Source of the DNA: Paramoeba atlantica
Lineage: Eukaryota > Protista > Discosea
Assembly (NCBI GenBank): GCA_977017575.1
Contig: CDRNVI010000012.1
Coordinates: forward strand, 1,136,653-1,200,652
Direction: 5' to 3'
DNA length: 64,000 nt
A program made the translations under genes and the position numbers. Below, in pieces: positions 764 to 64,000 of this stretch. Every line of letters begins with the position of its first letter. The stretch's first letter is position 1. Under the pieces are notes generated by a model that was not told the origin of the DNA, ran no database searches, and saw only the letters and a program-made list of their open reading frames with translations.

Positions 764-1999
764 ATGCCCCCTCTACGTGTCGGCATCAACGGCTTCGGCC
801 GCATCGGTCGTCTTGTCTTCCAAGCCCTTTGCAACCAAAAAGGCGTGCTGGGGAAACAAATCGAGATTGTCGCGGTCGTGGACGTCAGCACAGACGCCGG
901 CTACTTTGCCTACCAACTACGTCACGACAGCGTCCACCCCTCCTCGCGACGGGACTCCACAGGGGAGCTCATCGAGCCCTTCACCGTAACCACCTCTCTC
1001 CGTACCAAAGCCGAAGAGGCGATGGTAATCCCCGGAGGCACAACCAACGCCTCCAGCCCCGATACCACCCCCACCCCCAATGTCATTGTCATCAACGGTA
1101 AGCACCGTGTGCTCTGTGTCCCCGCCTCTCGCTCCCCCGCGGACCTCCCGTGGCGCTCGCTCGGGGTGGATTACGTGCTGGAGTGCACCGGGCTGTTCAC
1201 GGAGGGGAAGATGGCCGCGCAGCACCTCACCGCGGGCGCCTCCCGGGTCATTCTCAGTGCCCCGGGTAAGCCCACGCTGCCGGGGTTCCCGATTAAAACC
1301 CTCGTGATGGGTGTCAACCACCAAAGCTACAACCCTAAGAGTGACCTGCTGCTGTCGAATGCGAGCTGCACGACCAACTGCCTTGCACCGTTGGTGCATG
1401 TGTTGCTCAAGGAGGGGGTGGGACTGCAGAATGGCTTGATGAGTACCATCCATGCCATGACGGCCACACAAAAGGTCGTGGATGGGCCCAGTCTAAAGGA
1501 CTGGCGTGGGGGACGCGCCGCGAGTATGAATATTATTCCCAGCACCACAGGCGCCGCGAAGGCGGTGGGGGAGGTGCTGCCGGAGGTGAAGGGGAAGCTT
1601 ACCGGGATGGCGTTCCGGGTGCCAACGATTGATGTCAGTGTCGTGGACTTAACGTTCACCGCCGCCCGGGATACCTCCATCGAAGAGATTGACGGTATGC
1701 TGAAACGCGCCTCGCAGACCTATTTGAAAGGTATTTTGGGCGTAACCACTGAGGAGCTTGTCAGCACGGACTTTATTCATGACCCACGAAGCTCAATCTA
1801 TGACAGTGCGGCGACATTGCAGAACAATCTTAAAGGGGAAAAGCGTTTCTTCAAGCTTGTCTCTTGGTATGACAATGAGTGGGCGTACAGCAATCGAGTA
1901 GTTGATTTGCTGAAGTATGTGGGGTCGAAAGATTTGCTAAAGGGGTCGAAAGACAAGGCTCCTGCGCCAGGAAAACGCCGAGGAAAGAATAAGCTTTAA
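764..1999 (+). CDS. GAPDH: Glyceraldehyde-3-phosphate dehydrogenase, kinetoplastid glycosomal type
   Basis: [11 protein letters not shown], catalytic [26 protein letters not shown]; kinetoplastid-type [13 protein letters not shown] segment; ends in -NKL (PTS1-like). Confidence 0.97.
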
Positions 2000-2350
2000 G
2001 GTTACAGCGTATAGAGTAAGTGGGTAGCAAAAGGCGTTTTCAGAAACGCATTAATTGGGCTACTTGAATTGTCATGATTTTGCATTAATGTTGAACTCGT
2101 AATCTTCTTGGATTCGAAATTGCGCTGTTGTGGGCTATCTGCTTTTTTTATTTGCACATCGAAAGGTGTGCATCTCGTATTGTGAAATAATTCTCTTGCG
2201 ACTAGAGAATAGAATATTTCTGTTGCTTTCTTCTGCTCTGGGAGTGCATTTTGTAGTTGCGCTTTTTTGCTATTTCGGGGCCTTTATGTCATGTAGGAAA
2301 AAAATATACATGTGTACTGCACGTATTATAGAACACTTTATACTTCGTGC

Positions 2351-2388
2351 AGGTCACTATTAGGGTCACTATTAGGTCACTATTAGGT
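2351..2388. repeat. Short tandem repeat (AGGTCACTATT x3)
   Basis: aggtcactatt-agggtcactatt-aggtcactatt-aggt read directly. Confidence 0.8.
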
Positions 2389-2667
2389 GCACGAGAATGT
2401 TTCAAAATGCATTCAGTTGTCCTACACCACTACTCAATCGCTTGTTTTCCATTGTTTTACCACCGCGTTTAACGAATCTACTATTCCTTATGTAGGTAAT
2501 GCACGGTAAAAAATATTGATAGATGTACTAAAAACAATTAGAGGATTAGAGGTGGTCCTCCTTTTAAGGGTCCTTTCGAAATCTAAAGGCATTTTCTTTT
2601 TCATGCAAATTAAATTAAAGAAATGTATTTCTATGTACTGCCGTTGCCACATTGACCTTCCCTCTAC

Positions 2668-61033: not shown

Positions 61034-61389
61034 GGCAGGTATTTTTCATAACTGTAAATTAGCTATTTTGTTCAGTTATTACATGTACATGATGTTCATT
61101 CTTAACACCGTTAAGACTTGTACGATTTGCTTGACATATCAATGGCCAGATATACTTCGTAACTATAGGACGTCGCATGTAAACGTTGTTTACGTTTACG
61201 TAAACGTGTAAAAGTTGATGTTTACGTGTTTCCGAATTTATTATCATACCAAAGTACTTTTACTTTTCATCGAATGAAAAACAATGAATTTTTTTTGTTG
61301 TATTCTCACATTTTTCTGTGTTACATTCTTTCCACTCAAACCAACAAAACACAGACACACAATATATTTAGCTCGTTACCCTAAAATCA

Positions 61390-62817
61390 ATGCTCCGCTA
61401 CCAACGCATTTGGCGCAACACCCTGGAGCACTACGCGGCCTGGGGCAATGCCATGATGAAATGTGTGGACGACCGTGTCAACCACGGGGAGGAAAACTTC
61501 CAACGTGCTCTCACCGTACGCGACCAACTTCAACAAGTCGCCTCTCGGTGGAACCCGGATGCTAAGATTTACCTCTGCGGGTCGGTCGTCACTCTTGGGG
61601 TGCTGGAACGCAACAGCGATTTTGACATGTGTTGTTTGCTCCAGGATATGGTCTCGGAGTTTAAAGTACAGAGTCGGATGTGTGAGAAGTTTTGGAAATC
61701 TTGTCGAGCGCATGTCCCGCATCACCTACGGGATCACTTACTCGGGCTCGCGGAGTGTCGTACCCCTGTGGTGACGTTGCACTGTGTGAATGAGGCGAAG
61801 TTAAAACATATGCAGTTCGGTGAGCTTACCCCGGAGGAGGAGATGGATAGCCGTACGGCGGTGCTGCGACTGAAGACGCGACAGTTTAGCGATGAAGAGC
61901 TCAAGGAATTGTTGAGCAAGATGCCAGGCAAGGTTTTGCGGCATAACGTGAGTACGTATAACCCAGATACCGGGTCGGGGACAGTTCTCGAGTTGGAGAT
62001 GGACACTACGGTGCACGCCATGCAGGCACTGTCGGTGCTTCCCGACGGCAAGTTGCTGGCAAAGCACCAGCGGGAGGATTTGATACGGGATTTTAAGGAC
62101 GTGAATCGTGTGCCGGAGCTTCTGCGGTTTAACTGGGACTGCAGTTTTATGGGGCTGGGTATTTTGAACTCCTACTTGATACGAAAGTACCTGCTTGACG
62201 AGGCACCTGTATATGCGCGGTACTGTGCCATGGCGATTAAGATTTGGAGCAAAGGAAATTATTTTGGTGTGGGTACCGGAGGCTACCTCACTACCTACGC
62301 CATCAGCATCATGTTTCTGTACTTTCTCCTTGTCACACACAACATGAAGTGGATTGACCCTGGGTCAATGCCTCATCCGGTGTATCTTCCCCGCTACCCA
62401 GACTATGTCCCATTTCTTCCTGAGGAGCGGCCGAACCCTGCGGAGGTGGGGTACATCGTTGCCGAATTCTTTCGATTTTATGCGAATTTCGACTGGTCGC
62501 GTGAGGTAGTGAGTTTAAACCGCCCACGACGCTCCACACGGGATGACCTGCAGTGGAATTTTACGATAAAGGAACGGGAAAATTTTCACTATCACATCTG
62601 TATCCAGGACCCCTATGAGGCCATCAACACAGGGGGGTTGAATTTGGGCCGCTGGTTACATGAGGAAAAGGTGGATATTGTGAAGAAGGAGTTTACGAGT
62701 GCGGCGCAGCAAATGTCCTCATTGACCCCGCAACAAGCAGATCAAATCTTTTTTGGTCAGAAACGACCCCCGATAGGGCAAAAGAATTGGGCGACCCATA
62801 CCAAGCATCGAAGGTGA
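61390..62817 (+). CDS. RET2: RNA-editing terminal uridylyltransferase 2
   Basis: HYAAWGNAM, YLCGSVVTLG.LERNSDFD (DxD), LLGLAECRTPVV, NSYLIR, PHPVYLPRYPDY, CIQDPYE..TGGLNL, matching recalled KRET2 motifs throughout. Confidence 0.92.
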   Translation: MLRYQRIWRNTLEHYAAWGNAMMKCVDDRVNHGEENFQRALTVRDQLQQVASRWNPDAKIYLCGSVVTLGVLERNSDFDMCCLLQDMVSEFKVQSRMCEKFWKSCRAHVPHHLRDHLLGLAECRTPVVTLHCVNEAKLKHMQFGELTPEEEMDSRTAVLRLKTRQFSDEELKELLSKMPGKVLRHNVSTYNPDTGSGTVLELEMDTTVHAMQALSVLPDGKLLAKHQREDLIRDFKDVNRVPELLRFNWDCSFMGLGILNSYLIRKYLLDEAPVYARYCAMAIKIWSKGNYFGVGTGGYLTTYAISIMFLYFLLVTHNMKWIDPGSMPHPVYLPRYPDYVPFLPEERPNPAEVGYIVAEFFRFYANFDWSREVVSLNRPRRSTRDDLQWNFTIKERENFHYHICIQDPYEAINTGGLNLGRWLHEEKVDIVKKEFTSAAQQMSSLTPQQADQIFFGQKRPPIGQKNWATHTKHRR

Positions 62818-63116
62818 TCACGTGCTCGACATTGAGGTATTGCTTTCGATCTTTCTTGCGGGTTTCGTCCAACAATATTTTTGTGTCTCAGTTGAGACTC
62901 TTACATAACCTTATTGGGTTGTTGTGTGACTATTGAAGTCTATTTAGGAGTGTTTTTCTATTATCGTGGTTCGTCACGGCTTGAAATTAATAATGCTCAA
63001 GTGGCACATTGTTAAGCATTTGTTTCTCTATTTTTGGGAAGCAATTCTCAGTTACAGTTTTTTACATCTCTTTTTCTACTCTTTCCTTCGTTTCATTTCA
63101 ATCCTATCTTTTCCTC

Positions 63117-64000
63117 ATGAAGTCCACTCGCACCCATCGCCGACTTGTCAACAACTGGCACCGTCACGGGGGCCAGAAACATCAAAGCCTCGTTCCTCTC
63201 ACTTACGAATACCGCAAACCCCACCTTTCGGGGCGCCCCGCCTACTTCACCCTTAAATCCTTCTACACCCTCGGGTGCTACCCTTCAGGACTCGACGCTC
63301 CCTACCGTCTCCCCGACTTTTACAAACACTATCTTTCGAGTTATCTCCCCGAGCCCTATGAGGAGTGGCTCGCCTGCATGCAACCCAATCATGAGGAACG
63401 GATACGCCGCGCGTGTGCTAGTCTTCGCGAGGCAGAGCATAAGATGACCATTCCCGCTTCGTCAAAATGGCGGCCCATCCCGCTGATTACAGGGCTAGAA
63501 AAAGTGACACAACCGTTGGAGAGTTTGTTGGAATGTTTCGGGGATCGGATTCCCATTTCCGCGGGAATCGCACGACGGGTGTTACTTCACCACCGGGAGG
63601 AATTTTTTAACCTCACAAGGGTGTACGAGGAGGTAGTCACCACAATGGGAAGCACCCCTCACGCACGCTGGAAACTTTCCCACCCCACACAACGCGCGGA
63701 GCCCGCTCTGCCAGGTCGGCTTACCGAGGAAGAATCTCTCTTTTTATCCTCCTTAACCCCTTCCGAATTATCTTCTCCTTCCGATCCCCACTCATTGTCC
63801 ACTCTCCCACCATCTCCTCTCTCCCCTTCCTCTCACCATCCCACGCATGATCCGTCATCCCCGGAATTTAACACCCCAACCTCTACACTCACCCCTACCC
63901 CTCCTTCACCCACCCCTCCTTCCCCCACCCCCTCTACCCCTACCCCTCCTTCCCCCACCCCTACGCCCTCTACAACAAATCAAACCCCTCACACACATTC
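63117..64000 (+). CDS. Hypothetical protein, 3'-truncated (absent from the ORF track)
   Basis: ATG at 63117 after a pyrimidine tract; frame open to window end: MKSTRTHRRLVNNWHRHGGQKHQSLVPLTYEYRKP...; becomes Pro/Thr-rich. Confidence 0.7.
   Translation, partial: MKSTRTHRRLVNNWHRHGGQKHQSLVPLTYEYRKPHLSGRPAYFTLKSFYTLGCYPSGLDAPYRLPDFYKHYLSSYLPEPYEEWLACMQPNHEERIRRACASLREAEHKMTIPASSKWRPIPLITGLEKVTQPLESLLECFGDRIPISAGIARRVLLHHREEFFNLTRVYEEVVTTMGSTPHARWKLSHPTQRAEPALPGRLTEEESLFLSSLTPSELSSPSDPHSLSTLPPSPLSPSSHHPTHDPSSPEFNTPTSTLTPTPPSPTPPSPTPSTPTPPSPTPTPSTTNQTPHTH

What the first reader, a model, noticed from the sequence alone, without database searches (positions are those of the whole stretch)
900..64000. 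Recurrent C-rich to G-rich skew-switch islands embedded inside coding sequences
About ten islands of 0.6-1.3 kb have the same design: an extremely C-rich arm, an abrupt switch, then an extremely G-rich arm. Switches lie near 1.15, 4.4, 6.7, 20.05, 35.65, 42.15, 45.7 and 49.7 kb, weakly near 21.05 and 61.6 kb, and a C arm runs off the window end. Example counts: 6241-6300 has 46 C and 2 G of 60; 20341-20400 has 34 G and 0 C. The flip also affects synonymous sites of conserved motifs (Leu CTC, Ala GCC left; CTG/TTG, GCG, GTG, GGG right), so it acts on DNA rather than protein. C-then-G reads the same on both strands, so G-rich strands point outward from each switch. Established: this polarity marks bidirectional replication origins by GC skew, and G-run/GT-rich tracts mark divergent Pol II initiation regions in T. 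brucei. Inference: a dense set of origins or internal initiation/R-loop/G4 sites written into genes.
Basis: partly seen in the sequence, partly recalled or inferred. Interest (0 to 1): 0.9.

Follow-up and report, generated by a model that had tools for sequence, protein, structure and literature searches.

The report
Mirror-skewed GC islands inside kinetoplastid genes
In this kinetoplastid protist about one gene in four carries a 1-kb patch whose DNA has been driven to almost pure C on the left and almost pure G on the right; the patches are real, are also where copies of the genome differ most, and look like footprints of a two-sided DNA repair or initiation process that I could not find described.

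Summary
Seven strong and about four weak islands, 0.7-1.5 kb and up to 73% GC, flip from C-rich to G-rich. There are 6 strong C-to-G flips, no G-to-C flip, and at most 5 in block shuffles.

The flip sits at silent sites. Fourfold sites are 67% C on the left and 68% G on the right, against about 20% elsewhere. A syntenic relative lacks the islands. Four independent public contigs of the same organism, one RNA-derived, reproduce them, so they are not an assembly artefact.

New here:
- The bias is not ordinary GC-biased conversion. Within about 200 bp of the centre both C and G gain. Further out the order is C > A/T > G on the left and G > A/T > C on the right.
- Transversions follow the same rule as transitions.
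- No long-range skew leaves the islands.
- All ten centres lie in coding sequence, and arms stop 40-200 bp outside it.
- Differences between near-identical genome copies cluster at 3 of 4 islands covered (P about 0.02).

Best reading (about 35%): fixed break-repair or gene-conversion hotspots with strand-polar bias. Replication origins (about 22%) and divergent transcription zones (about 15%) are not excluded. At least 14 earlier notes of this scan report the same thing elsewhere in this genome.

The parts
820..1680 (.). Weak, diffuse island in the GAPDH gene (CDS 764-1999); flip between about 1150 and 1389
   Evidence: Fourfold C is 0.68 just left of 1150 and G is 0.55 just right of it. Reproduced in the RNA-derived contig L004 at 99.5% identity.
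4020..4715 (.). Island in the U-box/CCCH gene (CDS 4084-5208); switch at 4315; the left arm is cut short near the ATG
   Evidence: Fourfold C is 0.87 on the left and G 0.68 on the right. The syntenic orthologue on L001 has no island.
5686..7236 (.). Island in the solanesyl/polyprenyl diphosphate synthase gene (CDS 5633-7372); switch at 6716
   Evidence: About 120 residues rich in Pro, Thr and Ser are inserted in the C arm. At identical residues the third base is C in 47 of 71 (left) and G in 52 of 88 (right). The relatives L001 and L002 are flat.
19355..20545 (.). Island at the 3' end of a 1248-aa FAST-like gene (CDS 16758-20504); main switch at 20045; nested G patch at 19720-19830
   Evidence: The right arm ends 41 bp after the stop. 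There are 10 differences from ENA contig L103 within the island, against none in 6502-16794.
20857..21184 (.). Weak island in the gene at 20797-21438; switch at 21058
34945..35905 (.). Island covering the whole small gene at 35049-35804; switch at 35605; the G-rich tail runs 100 bp past the stop
   Evidence: Fourfold C is 0.82 on the left and G 0.79 on the right. Present in both haplotypes (L105 identical, L104 98.5%).
41839..42579 (.). Island at the 5' end of the gene at 41929-43191; switch at 42219; the left arm is cut short at the gene border
   Evidence: The spacer 41401-41700 is only 22.7% GC.
44874..46254 (.). Island at the 3' end of the oligopeptidase B gene (43406-46194, read in three frames); switch at 45714, beside the GRSAGG serine motif
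   Evidence: The reading frame changes inside C9 runs near 45450 and 45710. An A-rich Asn/Lys insertion lies at 45250-45420.
48855..50255 (.). Island in the enoyl-CoA hydratase gene (CDS 48718-50262); switch at 49725
   Evidence: There are 10 differences from ENA contig L102 inside the island.
61400..61950 (.). Weak island at the 5' end of the RET2-like terminal uridylyltransferase gene (CDS 61390-62817); switch at 61546
   Evidence: Two-fold pyrimidine-ending sites go from 0.85 C on the left to 0.38 on the right. Two-fold purine-ending sites go from 0.22 G to 0.78.
63168..64000 (.). Left (C) arm of an island in the last gene, which runs off the window
   Evidence: ENA contig L107 carries the rest (switch near L107 15750, G arm to about 16200). 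There are 11 differences between assemblies in 63494-63953.

Best explanation
Each island marks a fixed point inside a gene where the DNA is repeatedly broken and repaired from the other chromosome copy, that is, a recombination or gene-conversion hotspot.

Repair works outward on both sides. On each side the strand that runs 5' to 3' away from the centre ends up with G in place of A or T and loses C. Read on one strand, this gives C on the left and G on the right. Close to the centre (about +/-200 bp) both C and G are favoured over A and T, as in ordinary GC-biased conversion.

The push acts like a fixation bias of about 1.5-2 log-odds units per site. That is strong enough to fill silent sites, to replace tolerant amino acids, and to let low-complexity Pro/Thr/Ser or Gly/Glu/Arg runs expand by slippage.

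Shown: the geometry, the polarity, the per-base rule, the absence from a syntenic relative, and the excess of differences between genome copies at the islands.

Inferred: that the initiating event is a break; that the bias arises in repair synthesis or heteroduplex correction; and that the short spacers between genes escape because their processing signals are under strong selection.
For: 1. Profile. It peaks at the centre and decays outward. Third-position A+T is about 0.10 at the centre. The left arm runs about 800 bp and the right arm about 600 bp. These are the lengths expected of conversion or resection tracts.

2. Two zones.
- Core, -250 to +120: two-fold C/(C+T) is 0.64-0.90 and G/(A+G) is 0.71-0.83.
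- Distal left arm: C 0.79 but G/(A+G) only 0.14.
- Distal right arm: G 0.80 but C/(C+T) only 0.15.
- Human meiotic hotspots have the same anatomy, a symmetric centre with strand-asymmetric flanks (PMC7615360).

3. Base identity decides, not the mutational path. Log-odds measured at two-fold sites, which see transitions only, predict fourfold composition. For example, the right arm is predicted at G 0.64 and observed at 0.68. This is what a fixation bias would give.

4. Proteins are overridden. Against orthologues, codon positions 1-2 gain a net 84 C in the left arm and 32 G in the right arm. GC-biased conversion does the same to gerbil genes (PMC6573468).

5. Differences between near-identical assemblies or haplotypes cluster at islands.
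- 31 differences in 4122 bp of island against 49 in 26406 bp outside; random placement gives P = 0.02.
- Third positions differ at 0.88% in islands against 0.21% elsewhere.
- By my reading of the position lists, 4 of 8 borders between identical and divergent blocks lie in islands.

6. Indels in G/C runs and triplet repeats are about 2.7 times denser in islands.

7. No long-range skew, so this is not a replicon-wide effect.

8. About one island per 6 kb, a density I recall as usual for hotspots in small genomes (from memory).
Against: - Polarity. The one well-documented hotspot signature, human C>G and A>G on the resected single strand via REV1-type bypass, would make the left arm G-rich. That is the opposite of what is seen. 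The model therefore needs a different bias: a repair polymerase that favours G, or poor correction of mismatches carrying C on the invading strand.
- The bias is not canonical GC-biased conversion.
- No shared motif was seen by eye in the ±80-bp sequences at the ten switches; no formal motif search was run.
- Hotspots inside coding sequence are unusual.
- The SNP clusters run into AT-rich spacers that show no compositional drive.
- The SNP evidence rests on four islands. It comes from long-read assemblies that disagree on run lengths.
- Sex or frequent mitotic recombination is not shown for this organism.
Confidence: 0.35

Rival explanations
1. The islands are replication initiation zones, origins of the G-rich/G4 type. 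Leading-strand synthesis starts at the switch and runs outward on both sides. The first few hundred bases are made by an error-prone, G-favouring step, or G-rich outward strands are kept because they help the origin to fire.
For: - The polarity equals the classical origin skew, in which the leading strand has G > C.
- G4 motifs lie on the outward strand of both arms.
- In Arabidopsis most origins lie in genes, more often in exons. They sit on GC-rich peaks about 0.8 kb wide in an AT-rich genome, with strong GC skew and GGN clusters (PMC6499314).
- Human CpG islands combine a conversion-like GC core with bidirectional strand asymmetry attributed to origins (PMC2817419).
- A local excess of differences would also fit mutagenic initiation.
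Against: - Mapped T. brucei origins are 85-92% intergenic and have the opposite polarity, with G/A and plus-strand G4 upstream (PMC13179062).
- No skew extends beyond the arms, and there is no sawtooth between islands.
- There is no matching T>A / A>T flip.
- The arms stop at gene borders.
- One island per 6 kb is dense for origins.
- The Arabidopsis skew is one-sided, not a flip.
Confidence: 0.22
2. The islands are internal, two-way RNA polymerase II initiation or R-loop zones. They would be the counterpart of the GT-rich initiation regions of trypanosomes or of bidirectional CpG-island promoters. The displaced non-template strand on each side becomes G-rich.
For: - The polarity is that of T. 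brucei initiation regions. There, runs of G and T on the coding strand drive directional transcription, recruit H2A.Z and exclude nucleosomes (PMC5579346).
- The 1-kb scale matches promoter-proximal skew in mammals.
- Strong GC skew and G clusters are what I recall favouring R-loops (from memory).
Against: - Trypanosome initiation regions lie between gene arrays, not inside conserved enzymes.
- From memory, they number about 200 per genome; here there is about one island per 6 kb.
- Deamination of an exposed strand would enrich T along with G. Instead T falls from 0.36 to 0.055 at fourfold sites of the right arm.
- Antisense transcripts would run into the upstream halves of essential genes.
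- Polycistronic transcription already covers the spacers, yet the arms stop at coding borders.
Confidence: 0.15
3. Selection on the transcript or on DNA structure: a C-rich then G-rich messenger is favoured, for example for long-range pairing, or to avoid local structure.
For: - The per-base rule (the favoured base above A/T above its complement, whatever the mutational path) is what selection on strand composition would give.
- The islands are confined to genes.
- The two arms could pair, with about 100 or more cross-arm pairs and -230 to -308 kcal/mol per 600 nt.
Against: - Pairing is no better than in arm-wise shuffles for most islands: z is -0.1 to -2, with one at -4.6.
- Conserved residues of essential enzymes are replaced.
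- Only some genes, and only parts of long genes, are affected.
- Differences between genome copies are raised at islands, not lowered.
- The relatives do without the islands.
Confidence: 0.06
4. Assembly or sequencing artefact in low-complexity GC-rich DNA.
For: Run lengths are unreliable. Oligopeptidase B changes frame in two C9 runs. ENA contig L103 differs by 1-2 bases in G runs of the FAST island.
Against: - The arms encode conserved proteins in frame, with only the codon choice shifted.
- Five contigs of an independent ENA assembly and one RNA-derived JGI contig reproduce seven islands at 98.5-100% identity.
Confidence: 0.01

Closest known systems
Human CpG islands as described by Polak and Arndt 2009 (PMC2817419)
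   Same: A GC-rich core of about 1 kb carries a W-to-S, conversion-like signature. Strand asymmetry leaves it in both directions with the polarity of a bidirectional origin.
   Different: - The human asymmetry is weak and extends up to 1 Mb. Here it is extreme (skew to -0.99) and ends within 0.3-1 kb.
- Here the islands lie inside coding sequence.
- Here CpG is neither enriched by hypomethylation nor avoided.
GC-biased gene conversion hotspots that rewrite genes (gerbil Pdx1 and neighbours; PMC6573468, PMC7403616)
   Same: A local, lineage-specific, non-adaptive drive raises GC at silent sites and forces changes at conserved residues.
   Different: Canonical biased conversion is strand-symmetric. 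Here, outside the core, the complementary strong base is disfavoured: C/(C+T) is 0.15 in right arms and G/(A+G) is 0.14 in left arms. In those papers 'GC skew' means GC enrichment, not G-versus-C asymmetry.
Mutational footprints of human meiotic hotspots (Hinch et al. 2023, PMC7615360)
   Same: A symmetric central zone with strand-asymmetric flanks on the scale of resection; raised substitutions and indels.
   Different: The polarity is opposite. In humans the resected strand loses C (C>G, C>T). The human effect is seen in rare variants and does not reshape composition.
GT-rich RNA polymerase II initiation regions of T. brucei (Wedel et al. 2017, PMC5579346)
   Same: A kinetoplastid; runs of G (and T) on the outward coding strand, hence C/A-rich then G/T-rich across a divergent region.
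   Different: Those regions are non-coding and lie at array borders. From memory, they are about 10 kb wide. They have no GC-rich core and do not rewrite proteins.
T. brucei replication origins mapped by stranded nascent-strand sequencing (PMC13179062)
   Same: Mirror-symmetric strand composition and strand-specific G4 around a centre a few hundred bp wide.
   Different: Opposite polarity (A/G upstream, T/C downstream on the plus strand); intergenic; dominated by poly(dA)/poly(dT); G and C change by only about 4 percentage points.
Arabidopsis origins in exons (Sequeira-Mendes et al. 2019, PMC6499314)
   Same: GC-rich peaks about 0.8 kb wide inside exons of an AT-rich genome, with strong GC skew and GGN clusters.
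   Different: One G-rich strand runs across the origin midpoint rather than flipping from C to G. The magnitude is much lower.

Membership tests
Replication-origin GC-skew switch (bacterial type; human skew jumps) | Skew changes sign from C>G to G>C at the origin | tested here: met
   6 C-to-G flips and 0 G-to-C flips.
Replication-origin GC-skew switch (bacterial type; human skew jumps) | The skew persists across the replicon as far as the termination zone | tested here: not met
   Flanks 1-3 kb from the switches have mean skew -0.004 (left) and -0.068 (right). Inter-island halves show no pattern of positive then negative skew.
Replication-origin GC-skew switch (bacterial type; human skew jumps) | T>A accompanies G>C on the same strand | tested here: not met
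   Whole-arm A and T are about equal in both arms. At fourfold sites T is depleted in the right arm (0.055) and A is not enriched in the left arm.
Replication-origin GC-skew switch (bacterial type; human skew jumps) | Initiation of DNA synthesis at the site | not testable with these tools
   Needs nascent-strand, Okazaki-fragment or single-molecule mapping.
Kinetoplastid origin topology (T. brucei SNS-seq) | Intergenic position; poly(dA)/G4 upstream on the plus strand and poly(dT) downstream | tested here: not met
   All 10 centres lie in coding sequence. The polarity is reversed.
GC-biased gene conversion hotspot | Strand-symmetric excess of W-to-S at silent sites | tested here: inconclusive
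   Met only within about 200 bp of the centre. Not met in the distal arms, where the complementary strong base falls below background.
GC-biased gene conversion hotspot | Coincides with raised recombination | tested here: inconclusive
   Clusters of differences, and by my reading also block borders, between near-identical haplotypes fall on 3 of 4 islands (P = 0.02). There is no direct recombination map.
GC-biased gene conversion hotspot | A fixation bias rather than a mutation bias | tested here: inconclusive
   Transition-based log-odds predict fourfold composition, which fits a fixation bias. Without an outgroup or allele frequencies, the direction of the 80 differences cannot be set.
Bidirectional promoter or R-loop GC-skew island (CpG-island type; T. 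brucei GT-rich initiation region) | G-rich non-template strand on both sides of a divergent start region | tested here: met
   the polarity is as in PMC5579346.
Bidirectional promoter or R-loop GC-skew island (CpG-island type; T. brucei GT-rich initiation region) | Lies at the 5' ends of transcription units, outside coding sequence | tested here: not met
   The centres lie at relative positions 0.21-0.88 in seven coding sequences within one 64-kb same-strand array.
Bidirectional promoter or R-loop GC-skew island (CpG-island type; T. brucei GT-rich initiation region) | Primary transcripts, H2A.Z or acetylated histones, and RNA-DNA hybrids at the site | not testable with these tools
   Needs 5'-triphosphate RNA-seq, ChIP and DRIP.

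The most novel reading that the evidence does not exclude
A strand-polar form of biased repair or conversion ('skew-biased conversion') that has not been described operates at thousands of fixed intragenic points in this prokinetoplastid lineage. 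From each point the outward-running strand is driven to G and away from C, whatever the original base. The drive is strong enough to rewrite about a fifth of the proteome, and it leaves a footprint from which the initiation points can be read off the sequence at about 100-bp resolution.
Probability: 0.35. Interest if true: 0.85.

Novelty: new variant of a known kind. Interest (0 to 1): 0.75.

Why it matters
If the islands are footprints of a two-sided DNA transaction, this genome carries a sequence-readable map of where that transaction starts. That holds whether the starts are breaks, origins or start sites. Kinetoplastids are a group where origins, promoters and recombination sites are notoriously hard to define.

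The per-base rule found here is not predicted by the usual models of biased conversion, replication skew or transcription skew. One strand goes to G and away from C, transversions behave like transitions, and a symmetric GC core sits at the centre. The rule therefore points to an unstudied repair or polymerase bias.

It is also a clear natural case of a non-adaptive DNA force overriding protein conservation in essential enzymes (GAPDH, solanesyl diphosphate synthase, oligopeptidase B). This matters for phylogenetics, for tests of selection and for gene calling. Prokaryote-style gene callers already split these genes or call them on the wrong strand.

Tried and rejected
1. Hairpin between the arms. 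Arm-wise shuffles fold as well as the real sequence, so there is no register-specific pairing.

2. RNA editing that would restore normal codons. The RNA-derived contig L004 matches the genome at 99.5% across the GAPDH island.

3. Neighbour-dependent run extension or CpG effects. G3 is 0.59-0.76 whatever the flanking base, and NCG codons are common.

4. A shared motif at the switches. None was seen by eye in ten ±80-bp sequences; no formal motif search was run.

5. tRNA or other RNA genes as landmarks. None were found.

6. Anchoring of the centres to gene ends. By my calculation from the coordinates, the distances to the nearest coding border fit uniform placement within coding sequence (combined P about 0.76). 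What is real is that no centre lies outside coding sequence and that the arms are cut off at the borders.

7. A scan of metagenome contigs for the spliced-leader-like 17-mer, to collect more transcripts of this organism, returned 97 matches; the 84 listed are scattered over unrelated metagenomes and none is from the JGI sample that gave L004, so I took them for chance matches.

8. Closer orthologues. None were found for the polyprenyl synthase (best listed hit 47% identity) or for oligopeptidase B (36%). Exact look-ups failed for 16 of 20 window proteins.

9. Literature. No paper holds both 'Perkinsela' and 'GC skew'. The Perkinsela genome paper does not mention GC content or skew. A search on kinetoplastid coding-sequence skew found nothing relevant.

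10. The coincidence of three switches with Gly-rich catalytic motifs (polyprenyl synthase, oligopeptidase B, enoyl-CoA hydratase) is noted but not relied on. GGN codons may simply pin the apparent switch.

Full report
**Setting**

The window is a one-way gene array. All credible genes lie on the + strand and cover 62% of the sequence. The organism is a kinetoplastid.
- Pfam finds Tc-38, a RET2-like uridylyltransferase, and FAST/RESC-type proteins.
- The nearest polyprenyl synthases come from the free-living prokinetoplastids PhF-6 and PhM-4 and from uncultured relatives, at 47-56% identity.
- A public RNA-derived contig for the GAPDH gene begins with a sequence like the 3' end of a spliced leader.

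- Seven strong islands have switches at 4315, 6716, 20045, 35605, 42219, 45714 and 49725. Weak ones lie near 1150-1389, 21058 and 61546. A C arm sits at 63.2-64 kb. All show GC 0.55-0.73 against about 0.42 elsewhere, and a flip from C-rich to G-rich.
- With a two-sided criterion there are 6 C-to-G flips and no G-to-C flip. Block shuffles give 1.5 of each and never more than 5.
- The arm that leaves the window is completed in a public contig: C arm about 900 bp with skew down to -0.99, then a 400-bp G arm that ends about 100 bp after the stop codon.

**Is it an artefact?** No.
- The arms encode recognisable GAPDH, solanesyl diphosphate synthase, oligopeptidase B and enoyl-CoA hydratase in frame.
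- Five contigs of an independent ENA assembly (ERZ24900291) and one JGI transcript contig reproduce seven of the islands at 98.5-100% identity.
- Both haplotypes carry the 35.6-kb island.
- Only homopolymer lengths are in doubt. Oligopeptidase B changes frame inside two C9 runs. The two assemblies disagree by 1-2 bases in G runs of the 20-kb island.

**A DNA-level force**
- Pooled fourfold-degenerate sites are C 0.67, T 0.14, G 0.11, A 0.09 in left arms.
- They are G 0.68, C 0.20, A 0.07, T 0.055 in right arms.
- In island-free genes they are T 0.36, A 0.25, C 0.21, G 0.19.
- A syntenic contig of a relative has the same gene order (Tc-38, U-box, polyprenyl synthase, next gene). It has flat composition of 0.32-0.48 GC.
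- At residues identical between the two polyprenyl synthases, the third base here is C in 47 of 71 (left) and G in 52 of 88 (right). The relative shows no such shift.
- At differing residues, codon positions 1-2 gain a net 84 C on the left and 32 G on the right.
- The arms also hold low-complexity insertions and short imperfect tandem repeats.

**The rule of the bias**

Ordinary GC-biased conversion does not describe it. Binning by distance from the switch gives two zones.
- Core, about -250 to +120 bp. Both strong bases gain: two-fold C/(C+T) is 0.64-0.90 and G/(A+G) is 0.71-0.83, against backgrounds of 0.41 and 0.44.
- Distal left arm. C/(C+T) is 0.79 but G/(A+G) falls to 0.14.
- Distal right arm. 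G/(A+G) is 0.80 but C/(C+T) falls to 0.15.

The order of preference is therefore C > A/T > G on the left and G > A/T > C on the right.

Log-odds taken from two-fold sites, which can only report transitions, predict the fourfold composition to within about 0.05-0.15 per base (about 0.1 or better in the distal arms). Distal right arm: predicted G 0.64, observed 0.68. Distal left arm: predicted C 0.55, observed 0.60. T-to-G is thus favoured as much as A-to-G. What counts is which base ends up on which strand, not the mutational route.

Neighbouring bases matter little, and CpG is not avoided. Weak islands show the same flip on a smaller scale.

**Geometry**
- Left arms are 380-1030 bp and right arms 300-540 bp. 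The intensity decays outward.
- No skew continues beyond the arms, and inter-island stretches show no sawtooth.
- All ten centres lie in coding sequence (chance about 0.008, my calculation from the 62% coding fraction). Their position within the gene is otherwise compatible with random placement (combined P about 0.76, my calculation).
- Arms that reach a gene border stop 40-200 bp beyond it. The spacer 520-820 bp left of the 42219 switch is 22.7% GC, at a distance where unhindered left arms are still more than half C at third positions.
- None of the nine leucine-rich-repeat genes has an island. Some conserved genes (SpoU methylase, YbeY) have none either.
- G4 motifs follow the arms: 7 of 8 on the + strand in right arms, 17 of 19 on the - strand in left arms.
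- The two arms could pair in RNA, but no better than arm-wise shuffles.

**Differences between genome copies**

The ENA contigs are near-identical copies of this region, from another strain or haplotype. One stretch of 10.3 kb has no difference at all.

Against that background the differences are clustered.
- 10 in the 1.2-kb FAST island.
- 10 in the enoyl-CoA hydratase island.
- 11 in 795 bp of the last gene's C arm.
- None in the 735 bp of the polyprenyl synthase right arm that is covered.

That makes 31 in 4122 bp (0.75%) against 49 in 26406 bp (0.19%). Random placement of the islands reaches 31 in 2% of trials. Outside tandem repeats, third positions differ at 0.88% in islands against 0.21% in other coding sequence.

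The clusters run on into the adjacent AT-rich spacers. By my reading of the position lists, four of eight borders between identical and divergent blocks lie inside islands.

Caveats:
- Only four islands are covered.
- The differences are clustered, so they are not independent.
- The assemblies are long-read based.
- Where the two haplotypes differ by about 1% throughout (33-42 kb), the island there is not more divergent than its surroundings.
- Without an outgroup the direction of the changes cannot be set.

**What this means for mechanism**

The islands are sites of an ongoing DNA-level process that works outward from a point. Three kinds of process have that geometry.

(a) Break repair or gene conversion. 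Repair synthesis from the two invading 3' ends runs outward, so a G-favouring, C-avoiding step there gives the observed polarity. So would poor correction of mismatches carrying C on the invading strand. This model fits:
- the two-zone anatomy, which human hotspots share (PMC7615360);
- the tract-length scale;
- the fixation-like per-base rule;
- the power to override proteins, as in gerbils (PMC6573468);
- the clusters of differences and the block borders.

Its main weakness is polarity. The documented human signature (loss of C from the resected strand, C>G by REV1-type bypass) has the opposite polarity.

(b) Replication initiation.
- For: the classical polarity; the exon-located GC-rich, skewed origins of Arabidopsis (PMC6499314); and the interpretation of human CpG islands (PMC2817419).
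- Against: mapped T. brucei origins are intergenic and of opposite polarity (PMC13179062), and there is no replicon-scale skew.

(c) Divergent transcription with R-loops.
- For: the polarity of T. brucei GT-rich initiation regions (PMC5579346).
- Against: those regions lie outside genes. Deamination of an exposed strand should enrich T, which is depleted instead.

Selection on the messenger is unlikely, given the protein damage, the lack of specific pairing and the raised diversity.

I put break repair or conversion first at about 35%, origins at about 22%, transcription or R-loop zones at about 15%, selection at about 6% and artefact at about 1%. The rest goes to a process not yet thought of.

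Why the spacers escape is unexplained. The simplest idea is that these 200-500-bp spacers are packed with trans-splicing and polyadenylation signals under strong selection. An alternative is that the process needs a GC-rich seed, which only coding sequence provides.

**Novelty**

I found no description of these islands in kinetoplastids or in Perkinsela and its relatives. At least 14 earlier notes of this scan report the same islands on other parts of this genome and reach similar descriptions.

New in this report:
- the two-zone per-base rule;
- the transition/transversion test;
- the absence of long-range skew;
- the polarity comparison with mapped T. brucei origins and human hotspots;
- the confirmation in independent assemblies;
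- the clustering of inter-copy differences at the islands.

Noticed in passing
window 37553-38416 (-) and 55855-56469 (-): These are the only sizeable minus-strand ORFs outside the islands. They are remnants of DNA transposases: an IS1595/ISXO2 (Merlin-like) DDE domain and a DDE_1 (pogo-like) domain. Merlin elements have been reported in Perkinsela (PMC8101967, seen only in the search listing).
   Followed up: partly
window 28500-34000 and 57800-58600: ORF-poor, repeat-rich stretches. They hold 0.52-0.66-kb direct repeats, a 38-nt tandem at 32322-32403, C8-C11 and G9-G11 runs, and a 64-nt hairpin at 58512-58575. Pieces are shared between the two places and with 11.4-11.6 kb. These are dispersed MITE-like repeats, not skew islands. 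The second haplotype (L104) differs by 4-5% here.
   Followed up: partly
window 11946-13940, 14459-15523, 27893-28531, 34032-34778, 39094-39783, 40041-40880, 46455-47138, 47442-48233, 58715-61033: Nine leucine-rich-repeat genes are interspersed with housekeeping genes. Several have an N-terminal cap of the plant LRRNT_2 type (W..GV.C). None carries an island.
   Followed up: partly
L004 1-17; window 724/725: The RNA-derived GAPDH contig starts with GTTTCTGTACCTTGTT(G), which resembles the 3' end of a kinetoplastid spliced leader. In this assembly the junction is not preceded by an AG dinucleotide.
   Followed up: no
window 52403: The TAG stop of ORF 50576-52405 reads CAG in the ENA contig L102. 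The gene caller there reports a 759-aa product instead of 609 aa. This is either a stop-codon polymorphism or an error.
   Followed up: no
window 45450 and 45710: Oligopeptidase B is read in three frames. Both frame changes fall inside C9 runs of the island, while the catalytic GRSAGG motif is intact in the third frame. These may be homopolymer-length errors or real breaks; no independent contig covers this stretch, so I could not tell.
   Followed up: partly
window 6502-16794 versus 32989-34000: Divergence between the public copies is very patchy. There is no difference in 10.3 kb, about 0.5% across 34-41 kb, and 4% at 33-34 kb. This suggests long homozygous or identical-by-descent tracts broken by short heterozygous patches.
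   Followed up: partly
window 6668-6716, 45714-45750, 49700-49760: The switches of three enzymes fall within about 50 bp of their Gly-rich catalytic motifs: polyprenyl synthase DDxxD + 16 aa, oligopeptidase B GRSAGG, and the enoyl-CoA hydratase G.G.ALAL.CD motif. GGN codons may simply pin the apparent switch. With n = 3 this is anecdotal.
   Followed up: no
L107 16494-19616: The gene after the window end is an SNF2/Rad54-like helicase. It begins with a C-rich stretch (skew -0.2 to -0.5, GC 0.55-0.61 over its first 900 bp) that turns positive near 17400. This is probably another weak island.
   Followed up: no
L102, L104, L107 gene calls: The public gene calls on the ENA contigs break at the islands. 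The enoyl-CoA hydratase is called only from an internal GTG at the switch (187 aa). Spurious minus-strand ORFs are called inside C arms.
   Followed up: partly
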